Assembly (NCBI RefSeq): GCF_016433145.1 | Contig: NC_058130.1 | Location: 5,584,373 to 5,644,051 of the forward strand | Direction of reading: 5' to 3' | From: Gracilinanus agilis | Taxonomy: Eukaryota | Length of the DNA stretch: 59,679 nucleotides | Shown: positions 2,976-55,095 of the stretch, one piece after another | Layout: the number at the start of each line of letters is the position of its first letter | How positions within the stretch are numbered: the first letter of the stretch is position 1 | Position numbers and translations under genes: made by a program | Notes under the pieces: generated by a model | What the model saw: the letters and a program-made list of their open reading frames with translations, nothing else | What the model was told of the DNA's origin: nothing | Database searches by the model: none

Positions 2976-3334
2976 TTACTTCTGAAGTCATGAGTTATCT
3001 CTAGGTATGCAACTATTGAGCTCTGTTCTGTTTTTGTCTTCAAAATAAAGTGAGAAACGGAATTTATTTTGTCTGAGATTTGATGTTTTATTTTATTTTT
3101 TCTACCTCCCCCCCAAAAACCAAATAAAACCTCAAGAGTGTGCTTAATAAAAAGAAAGAAAAAAGTCCACTTCTTATCCAGCTCTCCAGAAGTGAGATGG
3201 GTCAACCCCCTCCTGAGGTGGTGAACTGCTTCCTTAGAGAGACTCAGACAGAGATCGAACAACCATTTGTTGAGATTTTTGTAGTGTGGAATCTTTTTTA
3301 GGTCAAGTCTGGATTAGTATCACAAATTCATTGA

Positions 3335-14433: not shown

Positions 14434-14669
14434 NNNNNNNNNNNNNNNNNNNNNNNNNNNNNNNNNNNNNNNNNNNNNNNNNNNNNNNNNNNNNNNNNNN
14501 NNNNNNNNNNNNNNNNNNNNNNNNNNNNNNNNNNNNNNNNNNNNNNNNNNNNNNNNNNNNNNNNNNNNNNNNNNNNNNNNNNNNNNNNNNNNNNNNNNNN
14601 NNNNNNNNNNNNNNNNNNNNNNNNNNNNNNNNNNNNNNNNNNNNNNNNNNNNNNNNNNNNNNNNNNNNN
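14434..14669. other. Assembly gap (236 N)
   Basis: Run of N. Confidence 0.99.
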
Positions 14670-36541: not shown

Positions 36542-38718
36542 AGTAATCATGTTATGCCATAGAAAAATAAACCTTTTAAGTGGCTTCCTATTGCTTACCA
36601 AAGACAGTATACATTTCTGAACTTGGCCTTCAAGGCCTTTCACAAATTAGCCTCTGCTTACCTTTCCAAACTTAGAGAAAAATAACAATAGTAAAACCAT
36701 TATGATGCTTTAGAATTTGCAAAGTCCCTTTTTGGTAACATTAAATATTGTTAGAATAAACTAAATTAAACCTGAAGAGCCCAGAATCTTAAAAAAAAAT
36801 AACCTGATGAGGCGAGTCATCTTCATGGACTTGAAGGGAAAACAGTGTCGTCCCATAGGCCTTCACCAGCTGCAGGGCTTGAAGGAGATGGAGTCTTGAG
36901 GAGGAGACGTAGGAGAGGAGCCGGCAATACTCAGTCTTTCTTTGTCCTGGGGAGCCACTCCCCACCTTGCAGCTTCCACCCAACACTGAGGATCGATAAG
37001 GAAGAAGACGAGAATTGGAGAGATGGTTGATATCTGGGATGACTATGACCTCCATGGCTCCTGAAAGCCTGGAGGACTTCCTTCCGGTTCCTTATTTCCC
37101 CACTGGTTTTAGATACGGAAGAATGCCACCCTGCGTCTCCAAGTAGACTTTGTTATTTCTTTATTAAAAAAAATAAGGTTGGCAATTCCCATAATGGAGG
37201 TCTCTTTAATTAGATTTGTCTGCCTCTACTCCCAGGACCCATAACCTTCCATGTCCTCAGTCATTTTTCATTTCAGAAAGTTCTACCATACTTAGGAGGT
37301 GGGTAAAGCTTAATTTCACTTGATAAATGAAGTTTAGATGCCATCAGAATGGATGGTGGGATCCCTCCCTGCCCAGTGAGCTAGCTACCAGAGATCCATG
37401 TAGGAGCAGAAGTGCAAAGCGCTCCAGCTAACAGAAATGCAGATTTGAAGACATGTAGTGACCAGAGATGGCACGTCTCCAAGATCTGTGGCTTCATGAT
37501 GTTCATACGCTGTCGGCTTTCAAATGGGCAGAGATGGGCAAAGGCTTGGATTTCCTGGAAAAGTCATGCTGTTCAGGTTAAGACAGGTGGCTGGGACTGA
37601 ATCCCTTCTGGGACTTTGAGCCCGGAGAGAGCCTGGGCCATCGTCTAGCCTGAATTCTCAATGTCACAAAAGATGGGTAAATCAAGGCCAGAAGGCTACA
37701 CAAACTTACCCTTAGGACACAAGCTTATTACGGGCAGATCTGGAGAATAGATCCAGATCTTATCAGTCCTCCTGGGGTTCCCTTTCTATGTCATGTCCGA
37801 TGTCCTTTCTAAATCTTCTCTAGCTTAAACCTCCCTATTTCGTCCAGCTCGTCTGTTTTTAAAAATGTGTTTTTATTGCATTTTACTTGTTTTCAGTTAC
37901 ACATAGAAACAATTTTTGACAACTATTTTCTGACATTTTGTGATTCAGATTCTCTCCCTCCTCTGCCCTCCCTCTCCCTGAAGTCTGATAGAGACTAAAT
38001 AACTATAGACTGTATAAACTGATGTAGGCTACAGCAGTTCAGCTAGTGCTCGAATGCCTTTGTTTCTCATTCCCTCATTATTCTGGGCTCCGACCTCAGA
38101 ATACACTGCATTTGGCCAGTAGCTTTCATAACCTGTCCCTTCCCCCTCCCCATTATGAATGCGATACTGTAGAGATGATCAGAGGAGGGCACAGTATGGC
38201 CCAGGCATTGCCTTAAAGTCATGCTCATTTCTTTTGTCTCCTATAGCAAGATGGAAAATCCTACGGCTCGGATTTCATTGCAAAGCCCGGATCTTTTTCA
38301 AGTCGACTGTTGACCAGCCAGGCCTCTTTAATTCTGCACTTGGGGTTGATTTTTTTTAACTCAACTGTGGAATTTTGCATTTATCCCTGCTGGATTCTTA
38401 TCTTACAGGATTTAAACCATTTCTCCTAGCCTGGCCTGATCTCTTTGGATCCTGACTCAGCCAGCTTGTGCGCTCCGCTTCCAAATTCTGTGTCATCTAT
38501 GAATTTCCCTAACGCTTCCCTCTCTGACTTCACTGGGAGAGAAAAGGACTAGGCCAGGGCCAGGTACGGACCCTGAGGGCACTGTGTTGGCGATCTTCCC
38601 CGGCCGGACACACCGGGCCACTGAAGACTACGGGGTTGATTTGGTCATTTAACCATTTCCAAATCTAACCAATCTACTGTAATCTAGCTCACAGCTCCCT
38701 CTTTTGAAATACAGATAT

Positions 38719-38922
38719 GGGCAACAGGTAGATGGCTCAGTGGATGGAGATCCAGGCTTAGAAATGGGAGATCCTAGGTTCAGTTCTGGCCCCAGACACT
38801 TCCTAGTTGTATGTCCCTGAATAAGTCACTTAACCCCCATGCTTAGTCCTTACCACTCTTCTACCTTGGGACCAATCCACAGTATTGATTCTAAGATGAG
38901 AGGTGAGAGTTTTTAAGAAAAA
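38719..38922 (+). mobile_element. Opossum SINE2-type element
   Basis: Head, CORE and tail ccttaccactcttctaccttgggaccaatccacagtattgattctaagatg. Confidence 0.9.
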
Positions 38923-39679
38923 ACAAACACCCACAAATCCTCTGTGTAGCAGCCCTTAGTTGCCTACCTCAGCCAAGCCCATAAGCTAGTTAAAGAAGAA
39001 AGCAGGGTTTCTTTGGTGCTAAGTGTCCGTGATGAAACTGCAGTAGCTCAGGGCACTCACTGTCTCCTCTTCTAAATAGTTTTGAGCCTTCCCTTTAGGA
39101 ATAGTTTATAACGTCTCAAGAAATCCGAAGTTGGATCCGTGGTTTGTAATTTCAAATTACAAAAACAAATTACAAACCACGGTTCCGACTTTTGTTGAAA
39201 ATCCTGAAACGTGGGCATCTCCGATTGTTTCGTGACTTGCCCACAGAAGACAGCTGGGCTCGTCCTGCCCTTTTCTCTCTGGCCTTGGGTGTCGGCTACC
39301 TGTTAGCCATTTTCTTTTTATCTCTCTGAGTACAATGACTCAGAAAAATAAGGAAGACAAGAGTTCAGTAATTCTTCCTTTTCCTTTCTTTCAAGTCTGG
39401 GACATGGTGAGGAGCATGCTGGCCCCAGTTACACTTAGGGCGCAATAGAACTGAAGTGCCTGGTGCTTCTGGGAAGGCTGCGCCCCATGTCTTGTCTGGA
39501 TATTTTCTTAATGACGTTTGGCTGACATACACAGAGGCGGCTGAGGGAGAGGCACGTGAGATGGATGGAGCATGCAGCAGAAGTTGAGTGCAGCTTCCTA
39601 TAGCTTTTTGAAACTCCATGTTCCAGGCTCTCTCTTTACCCTTTGGAGCCCACCAGCTCTTGCTAGCAGTTGAAGTGAC

Positions 39680-39886
39680 TTTGGAATTCAGTGGAGAATG
39701 TTGGGTTTGTAGTTAAGAAGACTTGAGTTTAAATCCTTCCTTGTGTGACCCTGGGATAGTCACATACCCTCTTCCAGCCTCAGTTTCCTCATTTGCAAAA
39801 TGTAGTTAATAATATCATCTACCTTCCAGACCTGTGAGTGTCAAGATCAAATGAGATAACTTGTTAAAGGAATTTTACAAATGTGG
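39680..39886 (+). mobile_element. MIR-type SINE running into the gap
   Basis: agacttgagtttaaatcc...gcctcagtttcctcatttgcaaaatg...agatcaaatgagataa. Confidence 0.8.
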
Positions 39887-40126
39887 NNNNNNNNNNNNNN
39901 NNNNNNNNNNNNNNNNNNNNNNNNNNNNNNNNNNNNNNNNNNNNNNNNNNNNNNNNNNNNNNNNNNNNNNNNNNNNNNNNNNNNNNNNNNNNNNNNNNNN
40001 NNNNNNNNNNNNNNNNNNNNNNNNNNNNNNNNNNNNNNNNNNNNNNNNNNNNNNNNNNNNNNNNNNNNNNNNNNNNNNNNNNNNNNNNNNNNNNNNNNNN
40101 NNNNNNNNNNNNNNNNNNNNNNNNNN
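39887..40126. other. Assembly gap (240 N)
   Basis: Run of N. Confidence 0.99.
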
Positions 40127-40155
40127 CTCTTAGTTGGCTTAAAAACCTAACTGTC

Positions 40156-40356
40156 GGGGCAGCTGGGTAGCTCAGTGGAGTGAGAGTCAGGCCTAGAGAC
40201 GGAAGGTCCTAGGTTCAAACCCGGCCTCAGCCACTTCCCAGCTGTGTGACCCTGGGCAAGTCGCTTGACCCCCATTGCCCACCCTCACCAATCTTCCACC
40301 TATGAGACAATACACTGAAGTACAAGGGTTAAAAAAAAAATAAAAAAATAAATTGA
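40156..40356 (+). mobile_element. Opossum SINE1, tail variant
   Basis: 16-bp TSD taaaaacctaactgtc at 40140-40155 and 40357-40372. Confidence 0.95.
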
Positions 40357-43009
40357 TAAAAACCTAACTGTCCTGTATGCTCTGTCTGAGCTAATTCCAG
40401 AAGGTCTGCTAGTTGCTGGATTACTGCGCCATCTCTTTTGAGGGCTCCTTTGAAGTTTCTGGATGGTCAGCCCTGGCTTTGGCTCTTGGGTTGGAGGAGG
40501 TGACCCCGAGGCACCGGCCATCCTAGAAACCCAGGAGCCTCTGAACCTTGGCTTCATTTTCAGGATTCATTGAGCAAACAGGTTGCTAATGAGTCGACGT
40601 TATTTCCTCAACAATTTTGGGTAGGGAAGGAAGGCCCTTCTCGAAACTGGGAACAAAGCTCCCTGTTGAATGCGTGCCATGGGGCAGGCTTGGTGCTGCC
40701 AGGGATGGACGAGACACTACCCAAAGGGACTCCCTCAAAGCCATAGGAACCGAGTGTTGGAGGGGGGCCCTTGTTTTCCTGGACGCTGGCTTTACTCTTG
40801 TCCTTGATAGTTTCCCTTTTTTCCAACCTCCCTTCTTCCAATCTCCTTGCTGATAGTCTCAACTCCCATGATGCTTCAGCTTGCTGGTTCTCTCCTTGGT
40901 GATCTACGTTTCTTCCTCTCCCTTGACTCTTCTTGCTTTCTTTGCTTCCTCAGTGTGGGGATTCCCCAAAGAGAAGAGGGGAAGCAGCTCTGCTCTAGGA
41001 GGGTTCTGGATGGAAGGTTTTAGTTCTCTCTTCCCGTCCTCTCCAGGGAGGTTCTCCTTAGAGCCCTCGGGAGCCATGACTGCTGTAGGAAGTCACGACG
41101 CTGGCATTTTGGGGAGGGGGAAATGCATGCTTCCAGATCCACTTGGCTAAAAGTGCTGGGCACTGTCCAGACTGAGCACATCCGGCCTGCAGTGATGGCC
41201 CGAGGCATGGGCCGGTTGCAGGGGGAACAGTGGAATGGCGGGAGAAAGGCAGGGACATGCCTTTGGCCGCTGGGCTCTCTTGTTGTCTAGAGATCTGCTC
41301 TGGGTCTTGCGGCCCTGATTTAGGGTTACATTTCGCTTTTCAGTTCTTTGCATTCCAGGATCTCATTAGAAAATGGAGGATCAGCCCCAGATGAGAACTC
41401 CATTAACACCCACTCCCTTGGAGGCCCAGAATCCTCCTCTCGGGCCTGCGGCCATGGCCGGGGCTGGTTGGGGCATGATGAGGTGAGGCAGAGGTGCCTG
41501 AGGCCCCTTCTCCGCTCTACCAACAACAGTCTCTTACCAGCAGCTAATGAGCCGGCTGCCTGTCGTGGCCTGTCCTTCCTCTGGCTGCCAGCCCCTGTGG
41601 TCAGAGGTGATTACAGGGACGGGCACCCCAGAGACACTGGTGTTTGCAGCCCGAGAGAACGCTCCGGGGGGAGCTGGCTGGGCTGGGCTTGCCAAAAGGG
41701 GCCTTTGTGCCTTGAGAAGCCTTGGGGAGTCGGTCTGGGTCGGAGCCTCCATCTCCCAGCAGAAGGAGGAGGGTGATCTGAGAGCCGGAGCGACACCGAG
41801 CCCGGCTTGCAGCAGGTCCTGTTTCCTGGGGAGGCTCACGTGGACGGCTGACCGCAGGCCACCTGGGTCTTCACCGAGATTCACTTAAATGTAGGGACTG
41901 GCCGGTGGGGCTCCTGGCCAGCCCGTCTCTTCAGAGCCCAGGCTCGGCGGCAAGAGAACACGGCCCAGCTCAGCCTGATGACAAGGATCGCTCTCCCTGC
42001 AGAGGAGCCAAAATAAGGAACTTTAGATTTGCCGGCCCATTCTGCAGCTGAGGAAGCTGAGGGCCCGGCGTGTGAACGGTAGCAGACAGCAAAACGAGCA
42101 TCCATGCCCGAGCCCCGGCCCCCTCCACACTCCGCTCTACGCTCCGTCTGTTTCTTTGGCTTGGCTGCATCCTCCAAATCGCCTCGGACGTGTTAGTGCC
42201 TTATGGTCAATGGTGATGGTTCAAGAGGTGGCAAAAGCCCTCTTGTCATGCTTGCACGCTCACACAGAGACACGCACACGTGCACGTGCACACGCAACCA
42301 CATACACGGCTTAAGGAGAGCTCGAATGCACTATGGGGAGATGCCCATCCTCTGCTCTCTAGGACAGGAGGCTCTGCTCCCAACCCTTCACTCCATTTGC
42401 TCCTGGGAAGCCTAGTGGGGGGACTTTGAGTGCTTTCCAGAGAATTGCCCACGAGGCAGGGCTGGGCAGGATCCCTCCTGAGAGTGAGCTCTGTCCCCAA
42501 GAGCAGTGCGCTGCCTCATGACCGAGTCTTCATTCAGAGGCTGGAAGGCCACTTGTCAGGGATGATTCTTGGTTTGGGGTACAGGGTGGCTCCCGGGGCC
42601 AGCTGCAGACATCCTGTGAAATGGGGTCTTCCCTTTGAGCCGAGAGGAGCATTCCATGAAGCGATGAGGGCCCAATCCAAGAGATCTCCGTGCAGTGCAT
42701 AAGATATATGAGCCAAGCAGAAAAAGGAACCTCTTTCGGGGTCCTTTGATGGCGGGAGGCCCCTGCTGAAGTGAAAGCAGCCCCCACAGGAAATATTTTG
42801 AGGCCTAGATGAATGCTGTCATCCAATAGCAACAACAGCCTTGGGATGGGCCTACCAGAGCTAACGGAGACTCAGCTGGATTCTCACAAGTGTCGAATGC
42901 TTCCACTGGTCGCTCTACTCTGCGCTGGTCAGGCTGGCCCTTGAGTATTGTTTACATGCATTTTCTGAGAGACTAGAAGGCGAGGTCAAGCATTCTTGAG
43001 GGTCTTTCA

Positions 43010-52138: not shown

Positions 52139-52379
52139 NNNNNNNNNNNNNNNNNNNNNNNNNNNNNNNNNNNNNNNNNNNNNNNNNNNNNNNNNNNNNN
52201 NNNNNNNNNNNNNNNNNNNNNNNNNNNNNNNNNNNNNNNNNNNNNNNNNNNNNNNNNNNNNNNNNNNNNNNNNNNNNNNNNNNNNNNNNNNNNNNNNNNN
52301 NNNNNNNNNNNNNNNNNNNNNNNNNNNNNNNNNNNNNNNNNNNNNNNNNNNNNNNNNNNNNNNNNNNNNNNNNNNNNNN
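52139..52379. other. Assembly gap (241 N)
   Basis: Run of N. Confidence 0.99.
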
Positions 52380-55095
52380 CATTGGAGGATGGAGGTCGCA
52401 CCAAACCATCTTGACCCACTGGACCCAGTGGAAGGACGGATGGGTCTGGAAGGGCCTCTTCTAGGTGGTCCTAGATCAAGGGGAAGCGGTGGGGGGAGGA
52501 GAGCACTCCAGATGTGGGGCCCAAGCTGGGATGTGGAGGTGAGCATGTGCGGAGCTCCTGTTTCTGTGACCCAGTAAAGGGCACAAACAAGCCATCCATG
52601 ACTGGCTGCACTTACCACTGCTTACCACGGGCCGGGCCCAGTGCTTAGCACCTGCCTCCTGGCAGTTCACCCTCCGATGGCTTGGCAAAATTGGCCACCC
52701 TGTGCCCACACAGGTAGCATTGCTTCTGGCATTTGGAATTTTTGCAGTTAGACCATTGCGCCGGCTCCTTCGTTTACACCTACCTGTTGCTTGTCTCCTC
52801 CCGTGCCGGGCTTTTGGGTGACGAAAGACCCCGAAGCTTTCCTTTCCGTAACCCCCGGCGGGCCTGGTGTGGCAGATCTAGGCCGAGCCTGGCGATTCTG
52901 GCCCGGCAGCAGAACCCGTCCCTGCTCCCAGACTGCCTGATCCGGCTGTCCCGGCTGCTCCCCTGTCGGGCTGCCTCCGCGACACAAGTAAAGACACCTG
53001 GCGAGAGAGCCGTCGGCCCAAGTCAAATGACAGGCGGCCGGCCGGGCTATTTGTTTGCTTCAGAAGGCAATAAATAGGGAGCGTTTTGGCGAAGGGCGAA
53101 ATAGACTGCAAACTCATTACCGCGTCTCGCGCGGCACTCGTTCATGCTGTTAGGAAGATTTATGACAATGACAGCGAAGGTAACGCCATGTTAATAAAGG
53201 AGATTCTGAAAAGCCTCTTTTCAGATGTTTGGCCCAGAATCCGGGCTTCGGCCTTCCAGGGCTCGCCTTGTCCAGCGCCTGAGTGAAGAGGCAAAGATGA
53301 AGAGGCTCCTTATTCAGCAAAGGCAGACTCACCAGCATTTATTAAGCACCTAGTGTGTGCGGGGTCCTGGGAACACAAAGGGAAAAGAATCCAGCCTCCT
53401 TGGCCCTCGGGGAGCTTCTATTCCCCGGAATTCCACCGACTTACACGGGCGAAGCTTTCCTTCGGGCATCTGCATCATTTGGCCGGATGGGTCGGGGCTG
53501 CTGGGATTCGGGAGGGATCTCTGAGCCGGGGGTCCTAGCAAAGAAGCAAAGGCTGCGAGTCCTTTCCTCAGGGGCCACTCTAGAGCCCTCTCGGGGGGTC
53601 TTTAAGAGCAGGAAATACTTGCTGGCCCTCTGCAGGGGCAGGTCCATGGCTGCCGGAGCCTCCTGGGCGTTCCATTTCTCTGCGCACACATGAGGCGATG
53701 GTGGGAGCGAAAGATCTCGCACGAGCCGTGCTCGATGCTGGGCTCAGGATCGGCCTCAGACGCGTCCAAGCTGTTCTCGAATGTCGGAAAGCCGTTTCGG
53801 CTTGCTGAGCGAGTGTCCACCACGTGGGCTCTACAGTGGGGTAGTGATGAAGATTGAGGGCCATCATGACCACCAGAACGTCCTTTACGCACGGAGAAGC
53901 GCCAGTCAGCTCTGCCACGTGCTTCCCACCATCACCGTCCTCGGCTCAGTTCAACCCTCGTTCTTTTAAGTGACATCCTGGTGATCCGAGGGCACGAGCG
54001 GAAGCCGGCCATTGGCAGAACGGGCTTTAGGGCGGGTTCTGGCCCATCCAGGTGCTTTGTGGGCCCTTCACCTCCTCGGCACCGAAGCCGATCGTCTTCC
54101 ATATTGAACCCCGCCTAAACATGGTACCCCAAGCATGTCCTCCCCTCATTCGCTACCGTTTCTGGGAATGAAAAAGAGGGTGATTAGAGCCGAGAAGCAG
54201 CCGAAAAGCTGAGCTTTTCCACATTTACGCTGGAGTTAGTGACCATCGGCTTCCAAATTCCAACAGATTGACCCCGTTGGCGATTGTATTATCACTTGCC
54301 TTCAGCAGTTCCTCATAATCTCTTCCATATAGTTGGGCCCCCAAATAAGTCAAGTTGTACTTGTTGGAAACTTGGTAGGTTCAAGTTTTGTCAAAGAAGC
54401 AGCAGCAACGGCAGCAGAGAGATAAAGAGCTGGTGGTCTCAGTGGCCTCCTTCCAAACTCTGACAGCTGAATGAAATCAAAATCCTTTTTGGAAAGGTGT
54501 TAGATTTTGACAAGCCGGAGCTGGGGGGCAGGCTGGGTAAATTCCTCCCCATCTGGTAAACCAGGAAAGGGGGCTCTGGGATCCTCTCCTTCTCTGGTGC
54601 CTGCTCTTTTTTTCCCCTCTTTCCCTTCCATCTTCTTTTTCCCAGCCTCACTTTCTGCCTGATTTCGTCTTCTTCCAGATTCCTTAGCTGCCGTGAATTT
54701 TGAAACGCTGCCACATCCACTTATCAGCCCGTGGCAAACGCAGCCCTCGCCAGGTTTAAGATGAAAGGCTTTGATAATATAAGGTTTTTTATGAAAGAAT
54801 ATAAAAATCCGTGTGCTAGATACAATATGCCTGATCCTTTTCAGGGAATTGTCAGGGTTATCTTCGTTTTTATGGGTTTGTGCAGAAGGAGAAAATCACG
54901 GGGAGCCAGAAACTTGATCTAGCCACTGAAAGGCACAAGAGGCTCCCAGAAACAGCCAGGGCATTCCAGGAGCCCTTCCTCCAGGGAGTCTTCCACCATT
55001 GCAGAGGAATACACCTAAGGCTTTCCTGGGAAATGCTCTACCCGCTTCCTGTCTCCCAGTGTGGGCTACAAGTTGGATCACTTTCTCCAGGCACA

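What the first reader, a model, noticed from the sequence alone, without database searches (positions are those of the whole stretch)
39111..39212. Unexplained 64-nt near-perfect hairpin with pri-miRNA-like geometry and an alternative inner fold
Seen: arm 39128-39152 (AAGTTGGATCCGTGGTTTGTAATTT) pairs with 39167-39191 (AAATTACAAACCACGGTTCCGACTT), giving 23 Watson-Crick pairs, 1 G-U and 1 mismatch around a 14-nt loop. An outer imperfect stem (39111-39121 with 39202-39212, 9/11 pairs) extends the fold to about 36 bp across an asymmetric internal loop. The loop holds a second AAATTACAAA, so TTTGTAATTT-C-AAATTACAAA (39143-39163) is a competing fold. I recognise no repeat family, TIR or TSD here. 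Inference: it could be an intronic miRNA co-transcribed with GLI3, a remnant of a fold-back element, or a template-switch duplication. I see no CNNC motif at the usual Microprocessor position, which counts against a miRNA.
Basis: partly seen in the sequence, partly recalled or inferred. Interest (0 to 1): 0.7.

Follow-up and report, generated by a model that had tools for sequence, protein, structure and literature searches.

The report
Young single-copy inverted duplication hairpin
The 25-base-pair hairpin is real and far beyond chance, but it most likely comes from a replication error that copied a neighbouring stretch backwards; nothing shows it is a microRNA gene or a mobile element.

Summary
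The inner hairpin is exactly as described. Arms 39128-39152 and 39167-39191 form 23 Watson-Crick pairs, one G-U and one U-U mismatch around a 14-nt loop. Fold z-scores are -7 (+ strand) and -8.6 (- strand), and about 3e-6 such repeats are expected per window by chance.

The two embellishments do not hold. The outer stem that gives the "36-bp pri-miRNA geometry" is no better than random flanks on the + strand and only marginal on the - strand. The "competing inner fold" has a pair probability of about 3e-6; it is only an 11-nt direct repeat in the loop.

The repeat ends sharply: 23/25 matches inside against 12/22 outside. It has no second copy in the window, no convincing target-site duplication, no Rfam family at threshold and no canonical CNNC or basal UG.

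The best reading is a young local inverted duplication (template-switch type), later changed at its centre and carried passively in non-coding DNA. In primates only 0.9% of such hairpins are annotated miRNAs.

GLI3 identity is unverified. The scan noted a similar template-switch hairpin elsewhere in this genome (s1-153817). Ordinary; low interest.

The parts
39128..39152 (.). Left arm of the inverted repeat (25 nt)
   Evidence: It differs from the reverse complement of the right arm only at 39132 (T for C, a CpG-to-TpG type change) and 39136 (T for A).
39153..39166 (.). 14-nt spacer, the apical loop of the fold
   Evidence: It is A-rich and contains the extra AAATTACAAA at 39154-39163.
39153..39165 (.). 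13-nt unit that repeats the next 13 nt (39166-39178) at 11/13; candidate centre insertion or tandem duplication
   Evidence: Read: CAAATTACAAA occurs twice with period 13. Without 39153-39165 the arms would be separated by a single C (25-1-25 palindrome). That this was a later event is inference.
39167..39191 (.). Right arm of the inverted repeat (25 nt)
39111..39121 (.). Left half of the proposed outer stem; not distinguishable from chance
   Evidence: The 9/11 match is reached by 14% of controls. Outer identity is 12/22 against 23/25 inside (Fisher p 0.006).
39202..39212 (.). Right half of the proposed outer stem; not distinguishable from chance

Best explanation
A 25-26 nt stretch was copied in reverse-complement orientation next to itself by a local DNA-level event. 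The most likely event is a replication template switch (a polymerase briefly copying the opposite or nascent strand), or the closely related fold-back repair. This produced a near-perfect palindrome in non-coding DNA. The centre either already held, or later gained, a 13-nt tandem repeat that now forms the 14-nt loop. Since then the arms have picked up two substitutions, one at a CpG. The hairpin is probably transcribed passively as part of a long + strand transcription unit. It has no dedicated function, though it is the kind of raw material from which young miRNAs occasionally arise. Shown: the repeat, its significance, its sharp edges, and its uniqueness within the window. Inferred: the mechanism, the order of events, youth, transcription and neutrality.
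For: - The repeat is real and non-random.
- Identity drops abruptly from 23/25 inside to 12/22 outside (Fisher p 0.006). The outside value equals the shuffle expectation (17% of shuffles do as well). This fits a discrete inverted copy, not a uniformly decaying element.
- No other copy of an arm or of the surrounding ~800 bp occurs in the 59.7-kb window, whereas neighbouring SINE fragments find many paralogues.
- There is no significant flanking direct repeat. The best is the 6-mer AAATCC, offset 7 nt from the right arm, with 0.38 expected among the boundary pairs tried.
- The four mismatches in the inner arms and proposed outer stem favour different strands: the inner wobble favours +, the two outer transitions favour -. 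That is what DNA-level decay gives and what selection on one RNA strand would not.
- Literature: template switching creates inverted fragments of at least 15 nt (28 nt at hsa-mir-4713) in single events. It produced 6,054 miRNA-sized hairpins in genic regions on the human lineage (PMC10710096).
Against: - No outgroup sequence was available, so the defining test was not done. That test is one arm present and the other absent in the ancestor.
- On the - strand the flanks add -15.5 kcal/mol, more than 99.7% of shuffled flanks. The repeat might therefore extend further in degenerate form.
- The 13-nt loop repeat needs a second event.
Confidence: 0.55

Rival explanations
1. It is a remnant of a short palindromic non-autonomous DNA transposon (a MITE or fold-back element, MADE1-like). 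Its terminal parts have decayed, and its inner arms are the better-preserved part of the terminal inverted repeats.
For: - Overall shape: two arms, a short loop, and possible weak extension to about 102 nt.
- On the - strand the outer flanks pair better than shuffled flanks.
- A TA dinucleotide precedes 39111.
- Marsupial genomes do hold hAT MITEs in thousands of copies (PMC4408412).
- One 59.7-kb window cannot exclude a family of moderate copy number.
Against: - There is no second copy in the window.
- There is no significant TSD at either the 64-nt or the 102-nt boundaries, although a nearby SINE keeps a perfect 16-bp TSD.
- Arm identity is strongly heterogeneous, 92% inside against 55% outside (p 0.006), unlike uniform decay.
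- The well-preserved part (51-64 nt) is shorter than usual MITEs.
- There were no pattern hits in the viral or metagenome collections.
Confidence: 0.17
2. Whatever its origin, it is a young lineage-specific miRNA or Dicer substrate, cropped from the host transcript and yielding ~22-nt RNAs from about 39131-39152 and 39169-39190.
For: - It has a 26-bp near-perfect stem with a 14-nt loop.
- It probably lies in sense orientation inside a transcription unit: window AT skew is -0.037 and GC skew +0.024 (inference).
- Young mammalian miRNAs arise preferentially in introns, and opossum has many lineage-specific ones (PMC3530682).
- Template-switch hairpins have become miRNAs in primates and mouse.
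- Generic low-score hits to many miRNA models.
- An apical UGU sits at the right place on the - strand (read).
Against: - The best Rfam miRNA scores are 29-31 bits against gathering scores of 52-117, and are equal on both strands, so they reflect a generic hairpin.
- On the + strand the lower stem needed by Microprocessor is no better than random. There is no basal UG, apical UGU or CNNC at canonical positions.
- On the - strand the stem would be 42-46 nt per side, longer than the ~35-bp optimum, and it would be antisense to the inferred transcription.
- Arm sequences occur in the main text of none of the ~8.4 million papers and preprints searched, apart from one unrelated paper.
- The base rate is 0.9% of suitable template-switch hairpins annotated as miRNAs.
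Confidence: 0.05
3. It is a DNA-level palindromic protein-binding site (for example a paired TAAT/ATTA or YGYGGTY-type motif bound by a dimer) within a developmental enhancer landscape.
For: - The arms carry TAAT/ATTA cores and a CGTGGTT heptamer in inverted orientation.
- The window holds masked blocks, and another first-stage note proposes an enhancer candidate at 52380-54400.
Against: - Any inverted duplication duplicates whatever short motifs lie in it.
- The TAAT-N5-ATTA spacing is not the P2/P3 spacing known for paired-class dimers (my own knowledge).
- No conservation data are available.
- 25-bp arms are much longer than any factor footprint requires.
Confidence: 0.03

Closest known systems
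Template-switch-mutation (TSM) hairpins, including TSM-born miRNA loci such as hsa-mir-4713 and mmu-mir-3086 (Monttinen, Frilander and Loytynoja 2023, PMC10710096)
   Same: A 25-nt inverted copy of adjacent sequence gives a near-perfect stem in one step. It lies in unique non-coding, probably intronic DNA. A few substitutions followed the event. Arm length falls in the reported range (at least 15 nt; 28 nt at hsa-mir-4713).
   Different: The ancestral state is not available here, so the event itself is not demonstrated. No expression evidence exists. The loop contains a 13-nt tandem repeat that needs a further event.
MADE1 / miR-548-type palindromic MITEs (Piriyapongsa and Jordan 2007, as reviewed in PMC4091103)
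   Same: A short unit made almost wholly of two inverted arms and a small loop, able to fold into a miRNA-like hairpin when transcribed.
   Different: There is no TA or other TSD, no second copy in the window and no recognised terminal motif. The arms are well matched over only 25 nt, with an abrupt fall-off.
Canonical intronic pri-miRNA (about 35-bp stem, loop of at least 10 nt, UG/UGU/CNNC motifs; Fang and Bartel 2015 as cited in PMC10710096)
   Same: The loop is 14 nt. The upper stem is 26 bp with one mismatch and one wobble. The location is probably intronic and in sense orientation.
   Different: The lower stem is at chance level on the + strand. Primary-sequence motifs are absent on + and only UGU is present on -. 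There is no family match and no read evidence.

Membership tests
Animal miRNA gene | Imperfect hairpin with at least 16 paired bases in the mature duplex region and an adequate loop | tested here: met
   26-bp upper stem with a 14-nt loop.
Animal miRNA gene | About 35-bp total stem with a lower stem of ~11-13 bp below the Drosha cut, flanked by single strands | tested here: inconclusive
   On the + strand the flanks add -3.4 to -7.1 kcal/mol, no better than random flanks. On the - strand the stem is longer than optimal (42-46 nt per side), and the gain is matched by 6-23% of genomic flanks.
Animal miRNA gene | ~22-nt reads from both arms with homogeneous 5' ends and 2-nt 3' overhangs | not testable with these tools
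   No RNA run holds the stretch.
Animal miRNA gene | Match to a described miRNA family | tested here: not met
   Rfam 15: the best hits are mir-23 at 29 bits (gathering score 52) and MIR1319 at 31 bits (gathering score 117). Nothing reaches gathering score in the window outside 39761-39809. miRBase and MirGeneDB themselves are not available.
Animal miRNA gene | Conservation of the hairpin, with compensatory changes, in related species | not testable with these tools
   No marsupial genome collection is at hand. Attempts to fetch orthologous contigs through local ORFs failed.
MITE / fold-back DNA transposon | Target-site duplication directly flanking the terminal inverted repeats | tested here: not met
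   The best flanking direct repeat is the 6-mer AAATCC, 7 nt away from the right arm, with 0.38 expected by chance. TA is present on the left of 39111 only.
MITE / fold-back DNA transposon | Multiple dispersed copies in the genome | tested here: inconclusive
   There is no second copy in 59.7 kb. The genome-wide count is not obtainable.
MITE / fold-back DNA transposon | Similarity to a known transposon consensus or terminal motif | not testable with these tools
   No Repbase or Dfam library is available. Local ORFs have no Pfam transposase signal.
Template-switch inverted repeat | Inverted fragment of at least 15 nt copied from sequence within a short distance | tested here: met
   25-nt arms 14 nt apart, 23/25 identical. 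The criterion is from PMC10710096.
Template-switch inverted repeat | Sharp boundaries of the copied fragment | tested here: met
   23/25 inside against 12/22 outside, Fisher p 0.006. The outside value is at shuffle level.
Template-switch inverted repeat | Ancestral or outgroup sequence lacks one arm, and the difference is explained by one switch event | not testable with these tools
   No orthologous sequence could be obtained.

The most novel reading that the evidence does not exclude
The hairpin is an opossum-lineage miRNA (or other Dicer/Drosha substrate) born by template switching inside an intron of a developmental regulator. That would be a marsupial example of the de novo miRNA birth route so far documented in primates and Mus.
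Probability: 0.05. Interest if true: 0.45.

Novelty: new member of a known kind. Interest (0 to 1): 0.15.

Why it matters
If the best reading holds, this is one more of the thousands of short inverted duplications that replication errors scatter through mammalian genomes. It is useful as an example of raw material for hairpin RNAs, but it has no demonstrated role. It would matter modestly only if small-RNA data showed precise processing. It would then document the template-switch route to new miRNAs in a marsupial and add a regulator co-expressed with its host gene.

Tried and rejected
There is therefore no depth-based copy number, no check in the other organism of the same study, and no RNA evidence. 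Local scripts read the window file for composition and self-comparison only.
2. Fetching orthologous or paralogous contigs through mechanical ORFs next to and across the hairpin failed. The word search with the 84-aa ORF found nothing. Exact look-ups of the 48-aa and 84-aa ORFs found nothing.
3. Pattern scans for the palindrome or a single arm found nothing in the viral and metagenome collections. The one 20-mer hit, in a Saprospiraceae MAG, shows no hairpin and fits chance (my estimate: about 2 such hits expected).
4. A full-text search for arm 13-15-mers in DNA and RNA spelling gave one unrelated paper. Supplements of the two opossum small-RNA papers are not held. Devor et al. 2009 is not held.
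5. Rfam at E up to 10 gave only sub-threshold generic miRNA-model hits on both strands.
6. Pfam on eight local ORFs gave nothing meaningful.
8. The alternative inner fold was rejected as a riboswitch-like competitor on energetics.
9. An assembly fold-back artefact was considered and thought unlikely (inference). Such artefacts give long perfect inversions, whereas this one is short, has two arm differences and has a modified centre. Run X1 holds 98% of the sampled words of the 1-kb stretch, though it may be the source sample.

Full report
**Observation.**
- The repeat finder reports arms 39128-39152 and 39167-39191, 25 nt each, 92% complementary and 14 nt apart.
- Comparing the left arm with the reverse complement of the right arm gives two differences. 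At 39132 there is T where C is expected, which is a U-G wobble on the + strand and an A-C mismatch on the - strand. At 39136 there is a T-T mismatch.
- As RNA, 39111-39212 folds to -38.0 kcal/mol on the + strand (z -6.95) and -44.7 on the - strand (z -8.57). None of 200 dinucleotide shuffles does as well on either strand.
- With the window's base composition, about 2.8e-6 repeats of at least 23/25 with a 3-20 nt loop are expected per window, and about 0.17 per 3.6 Gb. The repeat is therefore the product of a copying process, not coincidence.
- It is also the only complex-sequence short-range inverted repeat of this quality in the window. The others are A/T runs or have much weaker arms.

**The outer stem.** The outer stem is what produces the "about 36 bp, pri-miRNA-like" geometry. 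It does not stand up.
- The 9/11 match between 39111-39121 and 39202-39212 is equalled by 14% of shuffled flank pairs and by 14% of real flank pairs taken elsewhere in the window at the same spacing.
- I kept the 64-nt core fixed and asked how much the flanks add to the fold. On the + strand they add -3.4 to -7.1 kcal/mol, and 33-87% of random flanks do at least as well.
- On the - strand both outer mismatches become G-U, and the gain is -15.5 kcal/mol with 21-nt flanks. That beats 99.7% of shuffled flanks, but 6-23% of real genomic flanks at lengths of 21-30 nt do as well.
- After two strands and four flank lengths, this is not significant.
- A global alignment of the outer parts gives 12/22 identities, at shuffle level. 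This differs from the inner 23/25 (Fisher p 0.006). The repeat has a sharp edge.

**The alternative inner fold.** TTTGTAATTT-C-AAATTACAAA is present as sequence. A 1-nt loop cannot form, so at most 8 A-U-rich pairs are possible.
- That helix is worth -4.2 kcal/mol.
- The best structure containing it is -24.3 against -32.2 kcal/mol for the main fold.
- Its pair probability is 2.8e-6, against 0.999 for the main helix.
- What it reflects is a direct repeat. CAAATTACAAA occurs at 39153-39163 and 39166-39176, so 39153-39165 matches 39166-39178 at 11/13.
- Without those 13 nt the arms would be separated by a single C (a 25-1-25 palindrome).
- Either the palindrome arose spacer-less and its centre was later modified, or a pre-existing A-rich tandem repeat lay next to the copied arm. 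I cannot tell which; both need one extra event (inference).

**Surroundings.**
- The hairpin lies in about 800 bp (roughly 38940-39740) with no paralogue elsewhere in the window on either strand. The adjoining SINE fragment (38725-38921) finds many paralogues.
- Neither arm recurs in the window at up to 3 mismatches.
- No Rfam family reaches its gathering score in the window outside 39761-39809 (and for 38000-40500).
- Local ORFs are short and have no Pfam match.
- Three masked or gap runs of about 240 nt lie at 14434-14669, 39887-40126 and 52139-52379. I left them alone.
- Over the whole window T exceeds A (AT skew -0.037) and G exceeds C (GC skew +0.024). This is the asymmetry known for the sense strand of mammalian transcription units (established knowledge). 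The + strand is therefore probably transcribed. That is an inference, and I could not verify that the host gene is GLI3 (no exon anchor).

**Is it a miRNA?**
- Structurally the upper stem (26 bp) and loop (14 nt) are suitable.
- On the + strand the lower stem is at chance level. Reading, there is no basal UG at -14/-13, no UGU at the loop entry, and no CNNC 16-18 nt past the expected 3p cut. The nearest CNNC, at 39216-39219, is about 26 nt away.
- On the - strand an apical UGU sits at the right place. However, the paired region would span 42-46 nt per side, longer than the ~35-bp optimum, and it would be antisense to the inferred transcription.
- Rfam gives only sub-threshold hits. mir-23 scores 29 bits on both strands against a gathering score of 52, and MIR1319 scores 31 against 117. 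This is the behaviour of any long hairpin.
- The arm sequences appear in no paper's main text apart from one unrelated hit.
- The literature base rate is low. On the human lineage, 6,054 template-switch hairpins of miRNA size were found in genic regions, and only 0.9% are annotated miRNAs (PMC10710096).
- Against this, young mammalian miRNAs do arise mostly in introns, in sense orientation, and opossum has many lineage-specific ones (PMC3530682).
- I put this reading at about 5%.

**Is it a mobile element?**
- Over all plausible boundary pairs, the best flanking direct repeat is the 6-mer AAATCC (39121-39126 and 39199-39204). It is offset 7 nt from the right arm, and 0.38 such matches are expected by chance.
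- TA precedes 39111 but does not follow 39212.
- By contrast, the SINE at 40156-40356 keeps a perfect 16-bp target-site duplication. Young insertions here do retain their duplications.
- The abrupt fall in arm identity is unlike the uniform decay of an element's inverted repeats.
- DNA transposons and MITEs do exist in marsupial genomes (PMC4408412), and one window cannot exclude a moderate-copy family.
- I keep this reading at about 17%.

**Best explanation.** A local inverted duplication of 25-26 nt, most simply a replication template switch, fits these features:
- the arm length (at least 15 nt is the published criterion; 28 nt at hsa-mir-4713);
- the short distance between template and copy;
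- the sharp edges;
- single-copy status within the window;
- the lack of transposon hallmarks.

The mismatches favour different strands in the inner and outer parts. One of the two arm differences is a CpG transition, while five of the six CpG positions in the two arms (three per arm at origin) remain intact (read). This fits neutral DNA decay over a modest time. I would guess on the order of ten million years from general mammalian rates, which is a rough inference and not a computation on data. I did not test that note; it only suggests that such events recur here.

**What could not be done.**
- Only one run holds the stretch, of unknown kind and possibly the source sample. No RNA run holds it.
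- There is no marsupial genome collection, no repeat library and no miRBase among the tools. Attempts to reach orthologous contigs through local ORFs failed.
- Pattern scans of the viral, metagenome and prokaryote collections gave nothing, apart from one chance 20-mer without a hairpin.
- The three decisive tests therefore remain open: genome-wide copy number, the ancestral state in relatives, and small-RNA reads.

**Verdict.** The hairpin is real and non-random but ordinary. It is most likely a young template-switch-type inverted duplication with no shown function. The pri-miRNA geometry and the competing fold are not supported.

Noticed in passing
window 40140-40372: A complete tRNA-headed CORE/MIR-type SINE (about 40156-40356, A-rich tail) is flanked by a perfect 16-bp target-site duplication, TAAAAACCTAACTGTC, so it is a fairly young insertion. 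A related older copy lies at 38725-38921 (76% identity over 116 nt). Rfam gives a weak sub-threshold tRNA hit at 40161-40233.
   Followed up: partly
window 14434-14669, 39887-40126, 52139-52379: There are three runs of N, of 236-241 nt each and nearly equal in length. One lies about 700 nt downstream of the hairpin.
   Followed up: no
No letters from them were sent to any search tool afterwards. They lie next to a SINE-core-like fragment that begins near 39742.
   Followed up: no
window 3080-3135: A second short inverted repeat has 21-nt arms, 86% complementarity and a 14-nt loop. It is T/A-rich and low in complexity, so it is much less striking than the one studied.
   Followed up: no
window 39310-39360: A weak 53-nt imperfect palindrome (75% self-complementary, E 0.06 in the self-comparison) lies about 120 nt downstream of the hairpin. 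It is probably chance.
   Followed up: no
window 1-59679: The window has a consistent strand asymmetry (AT skew -0.037, GC skew +0.024). This suggests it lies inside a + strand transcription unit. No exon, Pfam domain or Rfam family was found to name the gene.
   Followed up: partly
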